The notes below the pieces were generated by a model. That model saw nothing but the letters and a program-made list of their open reading frames with translations, made no database searches and was not told where the DNA came from. DNA of 62,922 bases, the filler included, from Bigelowiella natans CCMP2755 (taxonomy: Eukaryota > Protista > Cercozoa): assembly GCA_000320545.1 (NCBI GenBank). It is 4 parts of 4 records of this genome, joined end to end, with 100 filler letters (N's around TTAATTAATTAA, not from the genome) between each part and the next. Parts side by side here need not be neighbours in the genome. Positions count along the whole stretch, not along the records: positions 13,919 to 44,099 come from ADNK01003191.1; 3 more parts are not named here. One strand, 5' to 3'. The position numbers and the translations under genes were made by a program. Shown here in pieces: positions 16,108 through 40,275 of the stretch; within the stretch, counting starts at the first letter, position 1; every line of letters starts with the position of its first letter.

Positions 16108-18193
16108 TTATTTGTTTTGAAGCAAACCCATCTCCGTTTCATTTAGGTTAAAATCAAAAATAGCGAGATCCTGTTTCAGGTATTGCTACGCAATTAAGAA
16201 AAGACAACAATGTGGAAAGGCATGAGCAATGGATCACGTAAACACGGATATTCAGAAATACCTGGTTCATTCCAGCTGTCACAAAGATGGCGTCGTTTTG
16301 TACAATCCAACGCAATACGACTTGAGCCGCGCTCACTTTGTATTTTGCAGCGATGGCCACAATATCCGGATCGTGAAATATGTCGACAGAACCGTGGAAA
16401 GGAGAATACGCTTGGTATGTGATATTCATTTTCTGCACAACATAAGAAAACAGTTTGAATGTAAGGTAACATTGACTGCATGGTGAGAAAACGCTATGAT
16501 ATCTCACTTCGTTATAATTACCTTGCAGAATTGGAGTGTAACGTCATCGTGATTTCCAACAGACATCTATATTCCGTCACCAATTCATTCACGCATAACA
16601 ATTAACTGTTGTGAACTTTTTAGAGATTTACCGAACATTGGTTTACAGCTGGAGGCACTTGGACGCCAGGAAGGAGGTCTTTTAAATGACTCGCTTGGAA
16701 GTTAGAAACCTAAATATTCGCAACCTCATCTTTGCCAAAATTCAACGCACCAAAAAGTCGTTTTTGTAAGTCTTTGACCCCAATCGCCCTTGCTTTTCCG
16801 TCGGAAACAAACTTTTCCATGGTTCGGTAAACATCCATCGTTTGCTCCGGAGTCTTACACGGAGAATGCATCAACATTAGGTCGACGTAATCCAGACCTA
16901 AGGGAATAATGACTTCAGCGCGCAAAGCGCAATTAGGAATCGTCAATCTACCCAAAAGAGCCATATCTCTCTCTAGATCTGCCGTCGAATTTCGCGGTCC
17001 TCCTCCACACATCCAGCCTTGATATGACGGGCAACACGGAATCTTCGTAGTCACAAATATTTCTTCTCGCGGGGCCTTTGCTTGGCGCACAGCAAGTCCT
17101 ACTCTTCGCTGCGTTGGATCTCCATACATCAGAGCTGAACGTTAATTTCGAAGGAACAGTTAGCATTTTTGCCAGCCATTTTGGTAACACGGAAACGTAC
17201 CCGTATCTAGTCCTCGACCTCCTATCTCCAAGAACATTGTGTAGTTGCCAGGCCTGCCGAAGGCTGACGACAGTATTATGTATGGAAATGGAGAAATCAG
17301 AGGCTAGAATAAGTTTTTTAATCCTTGTTTTTTTTTCCGATAGGTCTAAAAAGGAAGTAATACAGCTAAGTCTATTCCTCCATACCTCCGCCAAGATTGA
17401 CAATCGGCATTGACACCCCTTCTGCAATTTCAACGGTTGGAGTTCTCATGCTACTGTTCCATCTTATCGCTACAGGAATGCCCGCTAAAGGTGGGGGATC
17501 GACCGATGCGTCTTGTGCAGAATGGTTATTGTGGCTCAACATGGCCAATATCCCAAGTACGAAACTTATCACCAGGAGGGTCAGAGTTCCCAATATAATA
17601 ATCTTATGAGATTTCATAAACGCCTTCCAGCCGGTAGTCTATGAAAAAGAAAGTCAGAATTATGCTTTATCGTGTGGCCATACATAATATTCGGGTAACC
17701 CTGCGGTTCTCCTGCTCGCTGGCATTCCCTACAAATAACAGTTCATCATAAAACTAATGCCCATGATTTCTATACATTTTGACTTATTTCCACGTATGAG
17801 TCAGTTGAGTATCAGCAGACCTGAAGCTATTGGAGGAATTACCTAATAATTCAACATGATTAAGCACACTTTGCACCCGCCATCCGCATGTTTAGTAAGA
17901 TACTCACATCGTCTTCGCCTATTCCAACAATTTCCTCAAGATACTTGTTCGCAACTTGTAGAGTAAAATTTGAATCTTTCAGTACATGGCACGGGATTCA
18001 TGAAGTACTATCACCATTAAACTTTTCATCCTCGTCCTCCACAGACTCATTTAAAGAAACCTAGATTTATGCATTCAGTCCATGCCCGTTACTCAATACT
18101 CACATACGTTCAGGGCCTTATAAAGTTAAGCGAAAGTACCTTCTCGTAGGGTCTGTTGTGAGGTAGTGATACATCGCCGAGTTGCTCGGACAT
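16108..18193 (-). CDS. Aldo-keto reductase with an acidic N-terminal extension and one transmembrane helix
   Basis: The catalytic tetrad appears in GLDT|ALMYG (D, Y), IFVTTKIP (K) and LGLDYVDLMLMHSP (H). ARAIGV|VSNF, QAYSPF, SAAQVVLRWIVQ and IFDFNL are also present. Upstream exons MSEQLGDVSLPHNRPYEK|VSLNESVEDEDEKFN precede the TM segment IIILGTLTLLVISFVLGILAML. Confidence 0.88.
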
Positions 18194-22299: not shown

Positions 22300-23241
22300 C
22301 AGATACGATACCTTCGATCAACATCTGGGCATGCCATCAGCGGCTGCTTTTCGTTAGCTTGGAGTAAGGAAGTTTCCTCTAATCCTCCACTATTATCACT
22401 TTCACGTGTTCCTCTGTGTCTTGAGCATGTTCTTTGTGGTGCGAAAAAAGCGCTTTCATCTTGTGTGATTCTGAAGCATTAAATCTTTGCAGGTAGAGGA
22501 GCCGAGGTTGAAATCTAGTGTTCTATTTTTCATGTCAAAGACGAATTTGGCTTTGATCCTCCTTTAACAAAATTTTCAAATTGTCGTCTCTATCACAAAG
22601 TGTTCCTTCACGATACTCCCGTTCTTGCTGGGTAATTTGCTAGGTGGTATTAGGCTCCGAATTCAGGATGTAGCGACGAGCATTATCGTTGTGGTCACTA
22701 CTTATGTCGTTGCTCGGAAGCCTGTCGTAGCATTAGTCCCAACAACAACCCTGAGAAAATTCATAGCATCGATTACTTCATTCATTTGCAAGAGCTGGCG
22801 CTTCGGCAGCTCCGGGCTTGCGATTGTGAACCTTTATTTCTAGATACTCCATGCGTTGCTTCATCCCTCATGTTCATAATCTTATCCGTTGCAGTTCTTG
22901 CTTGGTCCTAGTATCTCTAGGATATCTCTGAGCACTGATATGGCACGAATATCAAACCTTCGAAGAGGTAACGTGCACCAATGGTGAAAGTGAAAAATTT
23001 TCAGTGCACATATTTTAATTTATGGCGCTGTGTTTCGAATGCTATGAACCGATTACTTCTCCAAGTCCACATTCTCTATGTCCACTTCCTTCATATGCTG
23101 CCGAGCTAGCTTCAATTGTCTTTTTTGCATGCTATGGTTCGATTGGTGTTGTCGGAGTATGGGATGAAGATCTCCGTCTCCCCGATCTTCTTTTGCTTGA
23201 AATTGCTTCTTTCTCGCCTTTTTTGGTTGTGTGTACATCAT
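22300..23241 (-). other. Possible hypothetical gene or pseudogene divergent from the histone-doublet gene
   Basis: It has a 62-aa basic first ORF (MMYTQPKKARKKQF...) and downstream coding-like fragments in several frames. I found no clean spliced model. Confidence 0.3.
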
Positions 23242-23877
23242 CAGATATATATTGACGGTGTGGCGTTGTGTGGTGTTGTGTGGCGATGCGTGCGAACCGA
23301 GCGTCTAATTTGTGCCAAACAAAATACTCTATGGTATAAAAACGTGAAAGTTATGATGCCCCCCGCCTCAACAAGTAATACAATACCGTCAGCATGAATA
23401 GTGTGAACAAAGTACCACTGCCATCTTCGGTATCCACGACACCTTCTGAAGCAGAGAGCAGCCCGTTACTCAGAAATCACCTGTTGCTGTCGCCGCCAGC
23501 CACAATAGTCGTTTGTAATAACCAATCATATTGATCTTACGGAAGTTGTCTAGCAAACTTACCCCCCTCCTCCCACGCGCCCACGCAGTTCCCTCTTCAC
23601 ATCAATAAGTCGCTGAGCTGCGAAGACGGGAGGAGCCTCTCCCCGTTCAAACTCGGTATACATGTAGATCTACTCGTAGATCTACGTGCACCTTCTAGGA
23701 GAGAGAATGGGCTTCTTCCGTTGCTCCGCTGCGTTTCCTGCCGTTTCGATCCTAAGTAAACTTACAATGATGGCGTGTTCATGTTGTCGCAGCGGAGAAA
23801 TCCTTGGGATAATGTTAGACAATTTTCCAAGCCAAAAACATCTGAGATATATTTCACACACAGCCCACATCGATTCG

Positions 23878-25122
23878 ATGGCGTCAGCCGGGCCCCCCTC
23901 CACGTTCACGGAGAAGAACGTAAAGCCCGTCACGATTATGGGGTCAATCGGGACCGCTATGCTATGGTAAACTTATTTTATTCATTCGTACTGGTATTAT
24001 CCCTCATGAGGACAAAGCCTGCACCTCTGTTTGCTCATTCATCTAACATATTGCTCGATGAAGAAGATTTGTATGAGAGGATTTGTCTGTGCTCGTCGTA
24101 GGGCTGGGTGGAATGAGAACGACCTTTGGATGACGGTCGCGGGTGGTGCTATCCTTTTACTCACAACGATTTTCGCGGTATGGGTTTTCTCCTCAAACCA
24201 ATCCCTCGAGCGTTCCGAGCTACCCTCCAACGAAGCCACAGAGTCGGACTCCGAAGACGAAGCAGCGCCCGGAGCACCAGCAGTGAAGTCAGGAGAGAAG
24301 TGGCTACGATTTCCACACGAACCTATCAGGTCTCTTCTTACGGTGAAGAGTGGTGATACGAACAAAGCTCCTTCTGATGATGCCGTTGCGTACCTCATCG
24401 GGGTTCAGGTAGTACCTCCCTGGGTCAACTTCATTTGCCAGTCACAAAAACCATTGAAGCTCACAGTTCGCATGTGCCTCAGGAATATTTAGCAGTTGAG
24501 CTGCTTGAGATTGCGGGGAATATAGCAAAGCAGCAGGTTCACGCCACCCACGCTTTGAGGAGCATTTGTAATTTTTTTTTTTTTGGAAAACGCAAAAGGC
24601 AAAATCTGGGGACGATAGCAACTTACCGGCAATTTCCTCATCGCAAGTTTCGCAAGCGTTGAGAGAAGATAAAGAGCTGGCTGACGTTCTCGATGGCAAC
24701 ACCGATTTGCTGTTGTCGTGCTGCAGTTTCGAACCAGATGAGAAATCTCTAAATCTGATTCTAGAAGGAGTACGTGGGATTTTGAAGATAGCACACCCCC
24801 ACGCTAAGTTTGAAGAGGCTGCAGGAAGAGTAGTCTACGAGAAAACACTTTTGGCTTGCTATCACGTAGCAACCTGTGCCAAGAAGATTAATAATAAGAC
24901 TGAAGGAAAGGAATCGAATATTGGTGTCCACAGCAAAGAGGTAGAAGCGGGTGTAAGCGAGATTTACAAAGGCGCCATATTGGACCACGCGATTTCTGAA
25001 GGCTTCAAGGTCGGTTTTCCTATGCAAAGAGATAAGTAGAACTGTGTACCTTTGAGAAGGCTTTCCGTAACAATGTATGTGTAATTCAGGCTCGCCTTAG
25101 GTACATGCAGGACTTCGACTAA
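23878..25122 (+). CDS. Membrane-anchored single-chain histone H2A-H2B doublet (2 TM + acidic linker + H2A fold + H2B fold), about 297 aa
   Basis: Exons 23878-23966, 24102-24408, 24483-24536, 24599-25009 and 25090-25122 join through four in-phase GT-AG introns (894 nt). The H2A-like part is LRFPHEPIRSLL...AVAYLIGVQEYLAVELLEIAGNIAK...ISSSQVSQALREDKELADVL. The H2B-like part is GVRGILKIAHPHAKFEEAA...VHSKEVEAGVSEIYKGAILDHAISEGFKARLRY. The hydrophobic segments are VTIMGSIGTAMLWAGW and LWMTVAGGAILLLTTIFAVWVF. Confidence 0.85.
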
Positions 25123-25453
25123 GAATGATTAATCATCACTCATGTGGGTGCGATTCCAGTCGCACTTAATTTAAATGAAATAAGTTTTTAATGAATATGG
25201 TTGATAATGATTTACTCGCTGAATAAATTGGTAGTGGACAGTGTAAATGTCATCAACAGGCTGAGCATTCAGCGCTATGCGCGCTGCTTGCGTAGCATGG
25301 ATAACATAAAATGCACCTTGTGCGCTTCATTTATCTCCAATTGTGCTGCTTCACCATTTGTGTGCAAGTAGCAAGATGAATAATAATTATGTACACATAT
25401 GCATAGCAATACACACACTAGACACACAAGTATATATGTGTGCGCAGGTCTAG

Positions 25454-25490
<37 letters not shown>

Positions 25491-25501
25491 TGTGTGTGAG
25501 T

Positions 25502-25542
<41 letters not shown>

Positions 25543-25568
25543 TGTGTGTGTGTGTGTATGTGTGTGTG
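25454..25568. repeat. (GT)n microsatellite, representative of dozens of SSRs: (TA)n, (CA)n, (GA)n, (TAG)n, (CAT)n, (CAA)n, (GAA)n
   Basis: Directly visible. Most SSRs in the window lie in introns. Confidence 0.95.
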
Positions 25569-26305: not shown

Positions 26306-27518
26306 TCATTCGGTCAACACAGAATTTCCTGCCGCCTTGCGCATCCTATTCGCTAGGGCGGCCCCAATACCGCTGCTACCGAGGAGGGGAGCATATATTA
26401 TTTCCACCTCCGTTTGGTCGAAAGCTCGCAAAGCACCGTACAGCTTACGCGAAGCCGTTTCAAGGTCTTTGTCGTCCCGAGCCAAAGTCTCTACATGGTC
26501 AGCGCCGTCTATCTTCAAATCCTCCGTGATCAGCACGCCTACTTTCTTCTTTTCGGCTCTGGCATCCTTGACGGTTTTCTCAAAAAAATCCTTGGAACCC
26601 TGAATGAGGACGAAGGGCGCGTTTGGCGCATAATGGGTGTACAGCATGCCGGGGGATTTCGGTTTCAGTGCTTTCTCCTCCCCCTTCAACCCCGGGTCAA
26701 CGGAGACGTTTTTCTCCCCTACGGCATCCTTCAGCATCTCGATGGTTACGCCCCCTGGACGCAAGATCACAACTCTCTGGCTCTCGTCAATTTTTCCCTG
26801 CTCTTCAGCTGCTGCAGCTTCCGAACAGTCTACTACTGTAGACTCAAGCCCTATCCCTGTGCCCCCACCGTCTACAACGCCTGATATCTTGGTGCTCAAG
26901 TCTTCCACTACGTGTGCCGCAGCTGTCGGGCTGGGCTTCCCTGATTTGTTTGCGCTAGGAGCTGCAATGGGCAACTGAGCGCCAGCAATGATGGCTCTTG
27001 CAATTGGGTGCGATGGCATTCGCACACCTACAGTCTGCATGCCGCAGGTTACGTACTTGGAAATCTTATTGCCCTCTTTCTTTATGGGGAGGACAATTGT
27101 CAGAGGCCCTGGCCAAAACTTTTGCATCAGCTTCTTCGCTACCTCCGGAACGCGCTTCTCAACTAGTGAAAGCACCTGTTCGTGGTCGGAGACGTGGACG
27201 ATTAGGGGGTTGTTCGATGGCCGTCCCTTCGCCCCGAAAATCTTCTGGATTGCCTCGTCCGAAAAGGCGCTCCCGCCTAGCCCATACACTGTCTCGGTTG
27301 GAAACCCGACCACCTCCCCTCCTACTCACCATACAAACGTAAAGGAATCATAAAGCGCTGAGAATAATACGAGAGGCATTTGACATGATGGCTTAACCTT
27401 TGAGGAGCTGAATGGCCTCCTTTAGTGTAGTGCGCATCTCTTCTGGCGCAGCAGCCTTGTCCACCTTCCACACTGGGCAGGGCTTTGCGTTCTTGCCCTC
27501 AGCGGTCCCTTTCTCCAT
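26306..27518 (-). CDS. SUA5: Threonylcarbamoyl-AMP synthase, two-domain Sua5 type; one intron
   Basis: Motifs VGFPTETVYGLG, AKGRPSNNPLIVH, FWPGPLT, AAPSANKSGKPSPT, GLESTVVD, ILRPG and PKSPGMLYTHYAP are present, plus the C-terminal SUA5 domain ending ALANRMRKAAG. Confidence 0.96.
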
Positions 27519-36709: not shown

Positions 36710-37615
36710 ATGAGTAGGGATGAATCAGGGCTAAAGTGGATCTCGAACGTGGTCTCGGCAGCCTCGAGTAGCAGCAACGATGCAGCCAATTGGACGGGCT
36801 CAACTTTAAGGGCAAGCACACAAATTAATGTCCACGGAAATGTTTTCCTCGAAAGTAGGAAACAATTCTTTGGGTTTATCAATCAACCAATATCGAAGAC
36901 TGTCAAGGAAGAGATGATGATGGCAGGCTATGGATTGGGGTTGTCGCTTTTTTCCCCCGTAGCGAACTTGTACCAGCTCGCAGCACTCTATCCAAACGTA
37001 AAATCTATGCTCTGTTCTTCTCGTGGTCTGACCTTCCGCATATGCTCATCCATCTATCCGCAGCAAGTTGCTCTCCGAATTGCTCAAGTTAATCTTGGAA
37101 CCCCAGTGAAAGACCATCTTTCCCCGTGGGTTGCTTTTGGAGTCCTAGGCGTTCTTCAGGGAGCTGTGTATGGCCATGCTAATATCAATTTTGCACGTAA
37201 GTTGAAAATTGATAAGACATTGAAGCTAAGCATGATTTTCCGAGGATCGGGATTCGCAGCATTACGGGATACAATTTCCCAAGGAATACCCTTTATGCTC
37301 TCAGACGCAATTCGAACGAAATGTCTTGATCCAATATTACCCTCTAAAGACCCATTCAACAATCATGCTAAACGATGGAGCTCATTGATTTATTGTTCGA
37401 TAGTATCCACCTATCTTTCCCAAGGTTTCCATAACTGCCAAACCGCAATGCAGACTCATCCTGAATTGTCGTACGTTGGTTCTCTTAACTCTATGATGAA
37501 AACACATGGAGTCCGTTTTTTATGGAAAGGGGCAGAAGCAAGAGTTGGACTATTAGTTGTTACAAATATATTCAATGAAGTCTTTTTGAAGCCTATCTGG
37601 CATGGGAATCTCTAA
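36710..37615 (+). CDS. Divergent mitochondrial carrier (SLC25)-like protein; intronless
   Basis: The ORF is 301 aa and hydrophobic. It contains IFRGSGFAALRD, SQGFHNCQTAMQ and GVRFLWKGAEARV, which resemble carrier repeat elements, although the canonical signature is degenerate. Confidence 0.6.
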   Translation: MSRDESGLKWISNVVSAASSSSNDAANWTGSTLRASTQINVHGNVFLESRKQFFGFINQPISKTVKEEMMMAGYGLGLSLFSPVANLYQLAALYPNVKSMLCSSRGLTFRICSSIYPQQVALRIAQVNLGTPVKDHLSPWVAFGVLGVLQGAVYGHANINFARKLKIDKTLKLSMIFRGSGFAALRDTISQGIPFMLSDAIRTKCLDPILPSKDPFNNHAKRWSSLIYCSIVSTYLSQGFHNCQTAMQTHPELSYVGSLNSMMKTHGVRFLWKGAEARVGLLVVTNIFNEVFLKPIWHGNL

Positions 37616-38762: not shown

Positions 38763-40275
38763 ATGGTGAGATGAGTAAGAATGCCACCTCGATGAAGACA
38801 GTTAACATATATGCATGCACACCCAACAATTCGGAAGGGTAAAGATACTCGATTCACCACCAAAAAGGCATTCTGTGTCGGATGGGATGGGAATCCTTGC
38901 CTTGTGCGTTTGAAAATAGTTTCCCTGATATGTAGGGCGGTTTCTGTTCAAGCAATGATGATAATCCACCTCCCATCGTCGAACCCGAGCTGAAATTCAA
39001 ATTGTTGTTGCTGGGCCCTGGAGAGTCGGGAAAATCAACAGTCCTTAAACAACTCAAAAGCATTTATAATGTGGCTCCTAATGAACATGATCTTGATGAA
39101 TGCAAAAAGGCCTTGCATCAGAATACCCTGGAGTGCATGAAGGTGTTGTGTGATGCTGCCGAGAGATTCAAGTATGGGCTAGGGGACGAGGACAGAAAAA
39201 CAGCAAAATGGCTTCAGGATGAAGATGTCCAATACGGTGACACTGCCATTACAGCTGCGCAGGCCAAAGCAATACAAAAGCTTTTCAAGAGCGAGGCGAT
39301 TCAAAACGCGTACGCGAGAAGGGATGAATTCTGGATACTCGACGCTTGCGACTACTACGTGGAACACGTACCAAGGTTCGCAGCACAGGACTACGCTCCT
39401 GATGAACGGGACATGGTGATGTGCCGGATTCGCACAACGGGGAGGGTCTTGGATGCAAAACTGAAAGTAAAGTCTCAAGAGAGGGGGGAAGGTGATCCCG
39501 AGTTCATCACATATGAGATCATTGATGTGGGGGGACAACGCAACGAGCGGAAAAAATGGGTCCAGATGCTTAGCAACGTCAAGGCCATAATATTCCTAGT
39601 CAATCTTGCGGGATATAACCAGGTCCTGTATGAAAACAAGGAGATAAATCGGATGTTTGAAGCCCTGGAGGTCTTTGGGAAAATCACAGGATGGCGCGAC
39701 GAGTCGAAGACGAGCACAGGGGCAAAGAACGCCTTGAGGGGGGGAGACTTGTTCAAACACCTACCCATTTACCTTCTGCTAAACAAAAAGGACATATTTG
39801 AGAAAATGATTTACAAAGTAGGGCTCGACAAAACGTTTCCTGAATATCGAGGTGAGGGGGGTTTTCTTTCCATGAAGACGATTATTGTTTACAAGCCTAT
39901 CAGGGATAGGTTCGAAAGGCATAATTTTTTCTAAGAATAACCCTCTGCTAGGTGGTAGCAAGAGCGACGAGGCCATAGATTTCATCAAGGAACAATTCCA
40001 AAAGAGATGCCCTCCTGGGAAAAATATTATGATGCTCGATATCACAGGGGTCTCCAGGTTGTGATGAGAACTTATGATGTGCTGCCGTAACCAGTAGCAG
40101 CGCATAATTGTACATTTTTGTGCATGCCTACACTGCTCTAAGATTTTCCCTTTCTCTGAGAGTTGTTTGTTGCAGCGTAACACATCGTTTTCAACTAACC
40201 TTCAGGCACGATGTCAGAACTGCGTTTCGCGAAATCGAGAAGGACTTGCTGAAGAATCACAGATCTACCTCGTAG
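38763..40275 (+). CDS. Heterotrimeric G protein alpha subunit
   Basis: An ATG-only first coding exon (38763-38765) splices to 38936, giving MGGFCSS. G1 is GPGESGKST, G2 RIRTTG, G3 DVGGQRNERKKW and G4 LLNKKD. Two further 3' exons end at KDLLKNHRSTS*. Confidence 0.93.

What the first reader, a model, noticed from the sequence alone, without database searches (positions are those of the whole stretch)
23878..25122. Membrane-anchored single-chain histone H2A-H2B doublet
Seen: five exons joined by four in-phase GT-AG introns give about 297 aa. The order is a short N-terminus, two hydrophobic segments (VTIMGSIGTAMLWAGW and LWMTVAGGAILLLTTIFAVWVF), an acidic linker (SELPSNEATESDSEDE), an H2A fold (24304-24691), a 25-aa linker and an H2B fold (24767-25122). 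QEYLAVELLEIAGNIAK and ALREDKELADVL align with H2A LEYLTAEILELAGNAAR and AIRNDEELNKLL. VRGILKIAHP and SKEVEAGV...GAILDHAISEGFKARLRY align with H2B VYKVLKQVHP and SREIQTAV...GELAKHAVSEGTKAVTKY. The last intron restores the H2B SEGxKA..Y ending, which independently supports the model. Known: core histones are soluble separate chains, and fused doublets occur in Marseilleviridae (H2B-H2A order) and as the SOS histone domain. I know of no integral-membrane H2A-H2B doublet, but I cannot search for one. Inference: a TM hairpin would display the pseudo-dimer on the cytosolic or nucleoplasmic face, for example as an inner-nuclear-membrane chromatin tether or a membrane platform for histone-binding factors.
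Basis: partly seen in the sequence, partly recalled or inferred. Interest (0 to 1): 0.95.

Follow-up and report, generated by a model that had tools for sequence, protein, structure and literature searches.

The report
Membrane-anchored H2A-H2B histone-fold doublet
A nuclear gene of the alga Bigelowiella natans encodes one chain with a membrane-spanning segment, an acidic spacer, and a tail-less histone H2A fold fused to a histone H2B fold; I found no report of this layout in a cellular organism, but its full splicing, location and function are unproven.

Summary
The window is Bigelowiella natans nuclear DNA, and the locus is JGI gene model Bigna1 145602 (296 aa). One 1,690-nt transcript contig from another strain (~99% identical) carries the hydrophobic exons and the histone exons together. 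It confirms a 5'UTR intron, intron 1 and the last intron. Introns 2 and 3 are retained in it, so they rest on the JGI model and on homology.

Pfam sees nothing, yet the spliced protein matches H2A and H2B specifically:
- PDB phmmer: the 60 best matches shown are all H2A or H2B-H2A chimeras, best E 4e-7.
- My own domain profiles: H2A 33.6 bits and H2B 30.5 bits, cross-scores near 0, shuffles at most 11.5 bits.

The order is H2A then H2B, the reverse of all 11 giant-virus doublets or triplets I fetched. Only one hydrophobic segment (residues 38-60) is a clear membrane helix; the first is marginal. There are no basic tails, several H2A DNA-contact arginines are replaced, and five of six H2A acidic-patch residues remain.

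My reading is a membrane-tethered H2A-H2B mimic that binds proteins, not a nucleosome component. Topology is undecided, and import towards the nucleomorph compartment is a live rival. No orthologue was found outside B. natans. It is a new variant of a known kind.

The parts
23124..23655 (+). 5'UTR exon. The transcript contig starts here, so the true start of transcription may lie further upstream. It carries several upstream ORFs.
   Evidence: L001 1-532 aligns at 99.8% identity. There is no in-frame ATG upstream of 23878 after the last in-frame stop.
23656..23863 (+). 5'UTR intron (GT-AG), spliced in the transcript.
   Evidence: Junction in L001 at 532/533.
23878..23966 (+). Coding exon 1: residues 1-29 plus two bases of codon 30. 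It holds most of the weakly hydrophobic segment 1 (residues 18-33).
   Evidence: Sequence. KD19 maximum 0.94 and Hessa-scale sum +7.3. Helix 16-31 in a low-confidence AF2 model.
23967..24101 (+). Intron 1 (135 nt, GT-AG), confirmed spliced.
   Evidence: L001 junction. Same junction in JGI model P0124.
24102..24408 (+). Coding exon 2: end of segment 1, TM helix (residues 38-60, 24124-24192), acidic linker (residues 61-96, 24193-24300), then H2A alpha1, L1 and the first half of alpha2 (from 24301).
   Evidence: KD19 2.12 and Hessa sum -0.77 for residues 38-60; linker net charge -7. H2A alignment from residue ~92.
24409..24482 (+). Intron 2 (74 nt, GT-AG). It is retained in the only transcript contig, where it shifts the frame and ends the ORF after 159 aa.
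   Evidence: L001 is continuous here. Removing the intron joins ...YLIGVQ to EYLAVELLEIAGN, which gives a continuous H2A alpha2.
24483..24536 (+). Coding exon 3: second half of H2A alpha2 (EYLAVELLEIAGNIAKQQ).
   Evidence: Matches EYLAAEILELAGNAARDN of PDB H2A chains.
24537..24598 (+). Intron 3 (62 nt, GT-AG) with a poly-T run of 13 T here and 11 T in the transcript strain. It is retained in the transcript contig, where its 60 nt stay in frame.
   Evidence: alignment: this is the only indel between the strains inside the 24102-25009 block. JGI model P0124 splices it. If retained in the window's strain it would shift the frame into a stop.
24599..25009 (+). Coding exon 4: H2A L2 (7 residues longer than usual), alpha3 and alphaC (to ~24703), linker (~24704-24760), then H2B alpha1 to the start of alphaC (from ~24761).
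   Evidence: PDB phmmer and own profiles.
25010..25089 (+). Intron 4 (80 nt, GT-AG). It is spliced in the transcript but not in the JGI model.
   Evidence: L001 junction. The H2B profile score rises from 22.9 to 30.5 bits with the spliced end.
25090..25238 (+). Exon 5: last 10 codons (ARLRYMQDFD), stop at 25120-25122, then 3'UTR to at least 25238.
   Evidence: L001 1536-1690. P0001 C-terminus.

Best explanation
This is a real, transcribed nuclear gene of Bigelowiella natans (JGI Bigna1 145602) with no detectable relative elsewhere.

**Product when fully spliced (297 aa)**
- A short N-terminus.
- A weakly hydrophobic helix (18-33).
- A bona fide transmembrane helix (38-60).
- A ~35-residue acidic, probably disordered spacer.
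- A tail-less H2A fold (~97-185).
- A ~20-residue linker, probably a remnant of the H2A C-terminal docking region.
- A tail-less H2B fold (~205-297).

**Inferred mechanism**
The two folds pair within the chain as an H2A-H2B 'handshake' pseudo-dimer held at a membrane by the flexible spacer. The chain lacks both basic tails and has replaced several DNA-contacting H2A arginines, but it keeps most of the H2A acidic patch. I therefore propose that it is not a nucleosome subunit. It would be a membrane-tethered H2A-H2B mimic that captures or positions proteins which recognise the H2A-H2B surface, such as arginine-anchor chromatin factors, H2A-H2B chaperones or importins.

**Shown**: gene structure, one transcript, H2A and H2B homology and their order, one strong hydrophobic segment, and charge and residue changes.

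**Inferred**: full splicing in vivo, membrane insertion and topology, intramolecular pairing, and binding partners.
For: **Organism and gene model**
- P0124 is named jgi/Bigna1/145602.
- The neighbouring Sua5 gene groups with chlorarachniophytes.

**Expression and linkage**
- Transcript L001 covers 23124-25238 and has three spliced introns.

**H2A identity**
- PDB phmmer on P0124 gives H2A chains at E about 2e-5 over residues 85-185, and H2B-H2A chimeras at 4.4e-7 with two separate domain hits.
- My H2A profile scores 33.6 bits on residues 84-200; the H2B profile scores 0.7 bits there.

**H2B identity**
- PDB phmmer on P0001 returns H2B or H2B-H2A chimeras for every match shown, aligned over the whole fold.
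- My H2B profile scores 30.5 bits; the H2A profile scores -1.3 bits there. Shuffles reach at most 11.5 bits.

**Membrane segment**
- Residues 38-60 give KD19 2.12 and a Hessa sum of -0.77.
- AF2 places helices at 16-31 and 38-64 and a low-confidence stretch without predicted secondary structure at 65-101.
- There is no Met between residue 40 and the C-terminal end, so any AUG-started product that contains the folds also contains this segment.

**Loss of basic character**
- The linker has net charge -7 and the doublet about -6.
- The H2A core is -6, against -1 to +3 in viral H2A cores.
- Using human H2A numbering from my own knowledge: R29 to P, R32 to S, R42 to A, R77 to A, R81 to S (alignments).

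**Acidic patch**
- E56, E61, E64, D90 and E92 are kept as E133, E138, E141, D174 and E176. E91 becomes K.

**Precedent**
- Prokaryotic histone-fold proteins exist that lost DNA-binding residues and gained TM domains (PMC11390915).
Against: - The only transcript contig retains introns 2 and 3. As assembled it would give a 159-aa truncated product. No read-level evidence for the fully spliced mRNA was available.
- The 546-nt 5'UTR has several upstream ORFs, and the first AUG has a weak context.
- No orthologue was found in 1.84 billion representatives or in the 5.8-billion-cluster set. Conservation therefore cannot support function.
- Pfam histone models do not hit.
- Both AF2 models are low confidence (pLDDT 51.5 and 49.5) and Foldseek on the first gave only generic helical repeats. 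There is no structural confirmation of the pseudo-dimer.
- The H2B core charge (+4) lies within the viral range, so some DNA contact is not excluded.
- Topology is ambiguous. The flank C-terminal to the TM helix is very acidic, which by the positive-inside rule would favour moving the histone part into the lumen.
Confidence: 0.5

Rival explanations
1. The N-terminal ~95 residues are a targeting leader, not a permanent anchor. The hydrophobic part would act as a signal peptide or signal anchor for ER entry. The acidic stretch would act as a transit-like or retention element. The doublet would then be delivered through the secretory route to the periplastidial compartment or nucleomorph, which encodes only H3 and H4 and must import H2A and H2B.
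For: - The organism is a chlorarachniophyte.
- Nucleomorph H2A and H2B are nucleus-encoded and imported (PMC4822330, PMC8887012), and such proteins need a signal peptide (PMC6411479).
- Nucleomorph H3 and H4 are extremely divergent (PMC8887012), so a divergent partner would not be odd.
- The acidic flank after the TM helix favours its translocation.
- Starting at Met40 would put the hydrophobic segment at the very N-terminus, like a signal peptide.
- An in-frame ATG at 24058 inside intron 1 would add a basic n-region.
- From memory, not verified here: acidic residues in transit-like sequences were linked to periplastidial retention (Hirakawa et al. 2010).
Against: - The strong hydrophobic stretch starts at residue 38 and is 22-23 residues long, which is more like a TM anchor than a cleavable signal.
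- I saw no convincing (-3,-1) cleavage site by inspection.
- The spacer has net charge -7, whereas plastid transit-like sequences are net positive (from my own knowledge).
- The reviews cited describe separate nucleomorph-targeted H2A and H2B in B. natans, not a fusion.
- No orthologue was detected in other chlorarachniophytes, although all of them need nucleomorph H2A and H2B.
- DNA-contact arginines are lost.
Confidence: 0.2
2. It is a young or decaying lineage-specific gene with little or no function. The prevalent mRNA would retain introns and yield, at most, a 159-aa membrane protein with half an H2A fold. The H2B part would rarely be translated.
For: - The single transcript contig retains introns 2 and 3, and intron 2 shifts the frame.
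- The 5'UTR is long and rich in upstream ORFs.
- The gene is an orphan in very large databases.
- Only two near-identical sequences exist. They differ by 2 synonymous and 2 non-synonymous changes, which says nothing about selection.
Against: - The reading frame is intact across five exons, although the folds have diverged to about 19-35% identity with other H2A and H2B sequences. That is hard to keep without selection.
- All splice sites are canonical.
- The only indel between the strains inside the 24102-25009 block lies in an intron.
- Alternative splicing is reported for B. natans (PMC12730881; caveats in PMC6142364).
Confidence: 0.15
3. It is a chromatin tether in the strict sense. The anchored doublet would dock onto H3-H4 and DNA, or replace H2A-H2B in nucleosomes at the inner nuclear membrane.
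For: - The H2A and H2B folds are complete.
- The H2B core keeps a net positive charge of +4.
- Part of the H2A C-terminal region is present as the linker.
Against: - There are no basic tails.
- The H2A core has net charge -6.
- R29, R42 and R77 equivalents are replaced, and the L2 loop is 7 residues longer and acidic.
- The H2A docking tail that contacts H3-H4 is replaced by the linker into H2B.
Confidence: 0.1
4. It is a histone doublet captured from a giant virus and integrated into the algal genome.
For: - Fused H2A/H2B genes are otherwise typical of giant viruses (bioRxiv 10.1101/2021.11.30.470311).
- From memory: the B. natans genome carries virus-derived insertions.
Against: - All 11 viral doublets or triplets fetched are H2B then H2A, the opposite order.
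- The gene has five spliceosomal introns.
- Neighbouring genes are ordinary cellular ones: aldo-keto reductase, Sua5, mitochondrial carrier and G-alpha.
- Identity to viral folds is only 19-35%.
Confidence: 0.05

Closest known systems
Giant-virus histone doublets (Marseilleviridae-type H2B-H2A fusions; also the H2B-H2A-H3-like triplets seen in IMG/VR contigs)
   Same: One polypeptide carries an H2A-type and an H2B-type fold joined by a short linker. It is presumed to form an intramolecular handshake dimer.
   Different: - The order is reversed: viral chains run H2B then H2A in all 11 fetched cases, and this one runs H2A then H2B.
- The viral proteins are basic, have lysine-rich tails and package DNA.
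- This one has a TM segment, acidic linkers, no tails and spliceosomal introns, and it sits in a cellular genome.
Engineered single-chain H2B-H2A proteins in the PDB (e.g. 7ybf_A, 6k00_D, 2jss_A)
   Same: These are the best sequence matches. Both domains of the query align to them, and they show that covalently linked H2A and H2B still fold as a dimer.
   Different: They are artificial, soluble, in H2B-H2A order, and have canonical sequences.
Prokaryotic 'transmembrane' histone-fold proteins (Schwab et al. 2024, PMC11390915)
   Same: A histone fold that has lost recognisable DNA-binding residues and is joined to a transmembrane domain. A role outside genome packaging is suggested for them.
   Different: - They are prokaryotic and are not derived from eukaryotic H2A or H2B.
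- They are not described there as H2A-H2B-type doublets.
Nucleus-encoded, nucleomorph-targeted H2A and H2B of Bigelowiella natans (Hirakawa et al. 2011, cited in PMC4822330 and PMC8887012)
   Same: Same organism, and H2A/H2B-type folds preceded by an N-terminal extension that contains a hydrophobic element.
   Different: - Those are reported as separate H2A and H2B proteins with a signal peptide plus a transit-like sequence.
- Here the two folds are fused and the extension looks like an anchor plus an acidic spacer.
SOS (Son of sevenless) N-terminal histone domain
   Same: A tandem pair of histone folds in one chain that forms a pseudo-dimer. It works at a membrane in signalling, not in chromatin (from my own knowledge).
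   Different: SOS has no TM helix, is peripheral and basic, and belongs to a large multidomain protein. No sequence match to it was seen here.

Membership tests
Histone H2A (core histone fold) | Significant, specific sequence similarity over alpha1-L1-alpha2-L2-alpha3-alphaC | tested here: met
   PDB H2A chains at E about 2e-5 over residues 85-185. H2A profile 33.6 bits against 0.7 bits for the H2B profile, with shuffles at most 11.5 bits.
Histone H2A (core histone fold) | Passes the curated Pfam histone models (PF00125 / PF16211) | tested here: not met
   No Pfam family at E<=10 for P0124:84-296 or for any exon piece.
Histone H2A (core histone fold) | Basic N- and C-terminal tails and DNA-contact arginines (R29, R42, R77; human numbering, from my own knowledge) | tested here: not met
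   The tails are replaced by acidic linkers. R29 to P, R42 to A, R77 to A. Core net charge -6.
Histone H2A (core histone fold) | Acidic-patch residues E56, E61, E64, D90, E91, E92 | tested here: met
   Five of six are kept (E133, E138, E141, D174, E176). E91 becomes K (alignments).
Histone H2B (core histone fold) | Significant, specific similarity over alpha1 to alphaC, including the HAVSEGTKAVTKY-type C-helix | tested here: met
   H2B profile 30.5 bits against -1.3 bits for the H2A profile. PDB H2B aligned over query 101-184 of P0001. The motif reads HAISEGFKARLRY after the last splice.
Histone H2B (core histone fold) | Lysine-rich N-terminal tail; passes Pfam PF00125 | tested here: not met
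   The fold starts directly after an acidic linker. No Pfam hit.
Nucleosomal core histones in general | Incorporation into nucleosomes with H3-H4 and DNA | not testable with these tools
   This needs reconstitution or ChIP. The sequence features argue against it.
Giant-virus H2B-H2A doublets | Domain order H2B then H2A; encoded in a viral genome | tested here: not met
   The order here is H2A then H2B. All 11 viral doublets or triplets are H2B first. The neighbours are cellular and the gene has introns.
Integral membrane protein (TM-anchored) | At least one segment hydrophobic and long enough to span a bilayer | tested here: met
   Residues 38-60: KD19 2.12 and Hessa-scale sum -0.77. Helix 38-64 in AF2. 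No dedicated TM or signal-peptide predictor was available.
   Segment 18-33 has KD19 0.94 and Hessa sum +7.3. However, it is helical in AF2, is followed by a 6-residue polar loop, is flanked by Trp residues and is rich in small residues.
Chlorarachniophyte periplastid/nucleomorph-targeted proteins | [quoted passage not shown] | tested here: inconclusive
   A hydrophobic element is present, but it starts late (residue 18 or 38). The following region has net charge -7.
Prokaryotic transmembrane histones (PMC11390915) | Histone fold without DNA-binding residues plus a TM domain, in a prokaryote | tested here: not met
   The architecture is analogous, but the gene is eukaryotic and derived from H2A and H2B. 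It works alike and is not a member.

The most novel reading that the evidence does not exclude
The protein is a genuine integral membrane protein that displays an intact-acidic-patch H2A-H2B pseudo-dimer. The membrane could be the nuclear envelope or ER, or one of the membranes around the nucleomorph compartment. There it would anchor or gate chromatin-binding or histone-handling factors. That would be the first cellular membrane-bound H2A-H2B module, and an independent invention of a histone doublet in the opposite order to the viral ones.
Probability: 0.3. Interest if true: 0.85.

Novelty: new variant of a known kind. Interest (0 to 1): 0.62.

Why it matters
- Fused H2A/H2B genes are regarded as a hallmark of giant viruses, and their order (H2B-H2A) has been used in arguments about histone origins. 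A cellular doublet in the reverse order, with introns, shows that such fusions arise independently.
- A histone dimer surface tethered to a membrane would be a new way to use the H2A-H2B acidic patch outside the nucleosome. Transmembrane histones of prokaryotes are a parallel case.
- The host has two nuclei of different ancestry in one cell and must sort two sets of H2A and H2B. The protein may therefore bear on how histone traffic, or nucleomorph chromatin, is controlled.
- It also shows that Pfam-based annotation misses divergent histone-fold genes. The public model carries no precomputed Pfam domain, and Pfam found no histone family in it here.

Tried and rejected
**Searches that found nothing useful**
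- Pfam on each exon piece, on P0001 and on P0124 whole and in parts gave no histone family. The only hits were sub-threshold ones to membrane proteins (Anthrone_oxy, Rv2743c, a holin) on the N-terminus.
- PDB phmmer with single exon pieces (exon 2; residues 94-132; residues 151-206) found nothing. The pieces are too short.
- HMMER of exon 4 against 1.84 billion representatives returned only the same-species transcript product, plus two spurious repeat-protein hits: WD40 and a coiled coil.
- The search for homologous proteins found only P0001 and P0124.
- The search for related loci in metagenome contigs found nothing.
- The look-up of encoding contigs for P0124 found no record. For the 159-aa ORF it returned only L001 again.
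- Rfam found no family in the piece.

**Structure prediction**
- AF2 in single-sequence mode on residues 84-296 and on the full model gave pLDDT 51.5 and 49.5. Foldseek with the first gave only designed helical repeats and 14-3-3, which is meaningless.
- I tried to build an alignment for AF2 from viral H2A and H2B pieces. MAFFT stacked the H2B rows on the H2A half, so I dropped it. A histone-only alignment would also have made the prediction circular.

**Literature**
- The primary papers on nucleomorph histones and on periplastid signals (Hirakawa 2009, 2010, 2011) are not held.
- No supplement or paper mentions protein 145602.

The spliced sequences used were the public model P0124 and the transcript product P0001. 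The complete 297-aa product (P0124 with the spliced C-terminus of P0001) was never assembled or submitted.
Full report
**What is at the coordinates**

Reading 23500-25500 shows an ATG at 23878 and an open frame. That frame can be carried to a TAA at 25120-25122 only by removing four GT-AG introns.

A protein search with the largest exon returned one hit, P0001 (188 aa, 98% identical). It is encoded on a 1,690-nt JGI transcriptome-type contig, L001. Aligning L001 to the window gives four blocks at about 99% identity:
- 23124-23655
- 23864-23966
- 24102-25009
- 25090-25238

From this the transcript shows three things:
- The hydrophobic exons and the histone exons lie on one RNA.
- Intron 1 (23967-24101), the last intron (25010-25089) and a further 5'UTR intron (23656-23863) are spliced.

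Retained intron 2 (74 nt) shifts the frame, which is why the gene caller split the contig into a 159-aa and a 188-aa ORF. The only in-phase solution is 24537-24598.

**Organism and public model**

The neighbouring Sua5 gene has its nearest eukaryotic relatives in chlorarachniophytes (Amorphochlora 62%, Gymnochlora 60%). A search with P0001 returned P0124, named jgi/Bigna1/145602/aug1.101_g20310. The window is therefore Bigelowiella natans nuclear DNA.

P0124 (296 aa) uses exactly introns 1, 2 and 3 as derived above but reads through the last intron. The best-supported product is therefore P0124 with the spliced C-terminus seen in P0001, 297 aa in all. Every search used P0124, P0001 or single exons by reference.

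**Are the folds really H2A and H2B?**

Pfam says nothing, and single exon pieces are too short for phmmer. The longer sequences give clear results.

| Test | Query | Result |
|---|---|---|
| PDB phmmer | P0001 | Every match shown is H2B or an H2B-H2A chimera; H2B aligns over its whole fold |
| PDB phmmer | P0124 | 205 matches at E<=1; the 60 shown are all H2A or H2B-H2A chimeras |
| PDB phmmer | P0124 | H2A alone at about 2e-5 over residues 85-185 |
| PDB phmmer | P0124 | Chimeras at 4.4e-7, with separate H2A (92-177) and H2B (210-287) domain hits |

For an independent, domain-specific test I fetched giant-virus histone genes with two degenerate DNA motifs. I cut their H2A and H2B parts by reference and built two profiles.

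| Profile | On residues 84-200 | On the C-terminal domain |
|---|---|---|
| H2A | 33.6 bits | -1.3 bits |
| H2B | 0.7 bits | 30.5 bits |

- 2,000 shuffles of each query segment reached at most 11.5 and 9.3 bits.
- The H2B score falls to 22.9 bits if the last intron is left in.
- The H2A alignment runs without a break across the exon 2/3 and 3/4 junctions, apart from a 7-residue longer L2 loop. This is the main evidence that introns 2 and 3 are real.
- The only indel between the two strains inside the 24102-25009 block is a 2-nt change in the poly-T run of intron 3. It would break the frame in the window's strain if that stretch were coding.

**The hydrophobic N-terminus**

- With a 19-residue window, residues 38-60 reach Kyte-Doolittle 2.12 and a summed Hessa-scale value of -0.77. 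That is a membrane helix by either rule of thumb.
- Residues 15-33 reach only 0.94 and +7.3.
- Three features keep a hairpin possible: it is helical in a low-confidence AF2 model (16-31, then a 6-residue NEND loop, then helix 38-64), it is bordered by tryptophans, and it is rich in small residues.
- Residues 61-95 carry a net charge of -7. In the AF2 model, residues 65-101 have no predicted secondary structure and pLDDT is below 50 across 60-117.
- P0124 has Met only at 1, 21, 28, 40 and in the unspliced tail. No AUG-initiated protein can contain the histone folds without the 38-60 segment.
- I had no TM-topology or signal-peptide predictor, so the orientation is open. A hairpin would put the doublet on the cytosolic or nucleoplasmic side. 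A single span with its very acidic C-terminal flank would more likely put it in the lumen.

**What kind of histone module is it?**

- Both basic tails are missing, and the doublet (84-296) has a net charge of about -6.
- On profile match columns the H2A core is -6, against -1 to +3 in 11 viral H2A cores. The H2B core is +4, within the viral range of 0 to +9.
- In the tool alignments, using human H2A numbering from my own knowledge, the DNA-contact positions R29, R32, R42, R77 and R81 are P, S, A, A and S.
- The acidic-patch positions E56, E61, E64, D90 and E92 are conserved; E91 is K. In H2B, E113 is kept and E105 is A.
- This pattern argues against a DNA-wrapping role. It fits a protein-binding surface.

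**Context and literature**

- The neighbours are ordinary cellular genes: aldo-keto reductase, Sua5, a mitochondrial-carrier-like ORF (sub-threshold Pfam hit) and G-alpha. Nothing looks viral.
- All 11 viral doublets or triplets are H2B then H2A, the reverse of this gene.
- B. natans has about 7.8 introns per gene, and alternative splicing is reported for it (PMC12730881; caveats in PMC6142364). An intron-retaining contig is therefore not alarming.
- In chlorarachniophytes the nucleomorph encodes only H3 and H4. H2A and H2B are nucleus-encoded and imported (PMC4822330, PMC8887012), and nucleomorph-targeted proteins are expected to carry a signal peptide (PMC6411479). This makes import into the periplastidial compartment a serious rival for the role of the N-terminus. 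Against it: the hydrophobic element starts late and is long, the following stretch is strongly acidic, the known nucleomorph H2A and H2B are described as separate proteins, and I could not obtain their sequences or the primary paper.
- Prokaryotic histone-fold proteins that lost DNA-binding residues and gained TM domains have been described (PMC11390915). 'Membrane histone' as a concept therefore has a precedent. I found no report of a eukaryotic one.

**Limits**

- No relative outside B. natans was found in 1.84 billion representatives or in the 5.8-billion-cluster set. A very divergent orthologue could have been missed.
- There is only one transcript contig, and it is not fully spliced.
- The AF2 models are poor and Foldseek was uninformative.
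- Selection cannot be measured from two sequences that differ at four coding sites.

**Verdict**

The architecture is a new variant of known kinds (histone doublets, transmembrane histones).

My preferred mechanism is a membrane-tethered, non-nucleosomal H2A-H2B mimic that presents its acidic patch. The leading rival is a leader for import towards the nucleomorph compartment. Interest is moderate to high (0.62). The layout is surprising and sits in an organism where histone sorting is an open problem, but it is so far a single-species orphan with no functional data.

Noticed in passing
window 24031-24101 (3' part of intron 1), ATG at 24058: The frame of exon 2 stays open back into intron 1. 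An in-frame ATG there would give an alternative N-terminus, MKKICMRGFVCARRR..., directly before the TM helix. That is a basic n-region plus a hydrophobic core, the classical signal or signal-anchor layout. It would need intron 1 retention or an internal start of transcription. The one transcript splices intron 1.
   Followed up: partly
window 26306-27313 (- strand): The Sua5/TsaC gene (Pfam Sua5_yciO_yrdC plus Sua5_C) is 50-55% identical to Bacillaceae enzymes. In the list of the best 120 hits, the only named eukaryotic ones are chlorarachniophytes. This suggests an old bacterial gene transfer into this algal lineage, or an organelle-type enzyme.
   Followed up: no
window 23124-23877 (L001 1-546): The 5'UTR is unusually long at 546 nt, is spliced, and carries several upstream ORFs, for example 46 aa starting MNSVNK and 88 aa starting MVRLVL. 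The main AUG has T at -3, whereas Met21 has A at -3 and G at +4. This suggests leaky scanning or translational control.
   Followed up: partly
window 24570-24584: The poly-T run in intron 3 is 13 T in the genome and 11 T in the transcript strain. Retention is therefore in frame in one strain (adding 20 residues to the H2A L2 loop in P0001) and frame-breaking in the other.
   Followed up: yes
window 25455-25568: A (TG)57 microsatellite lies about 330 nt downstream of the stop codon, between this gene and the convergent Sua5 gene.
   Followed up: no
L006 5078-6079 and L007 3225-4169 (IMG/VR giant-virus contigs): Two viral ORFs fuse three histone folds in one chain: H2B, H2A and an H3-like C-terminal domain (334 and 315 aa). 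They are triplets, not doublets.
   Followed up: no
window 16154-17129 (- strand), 36710-37615 (+), 39002-39934 (+): Ordinary cellular neighbours: aldo-keto reductase fragments split by introns, a weak sub-threshold mitochondrial-carrier repeat, and a G-protein alpha subunit. No RNA family from Rfam was found anywhere in the piece.
   Followed up: partly
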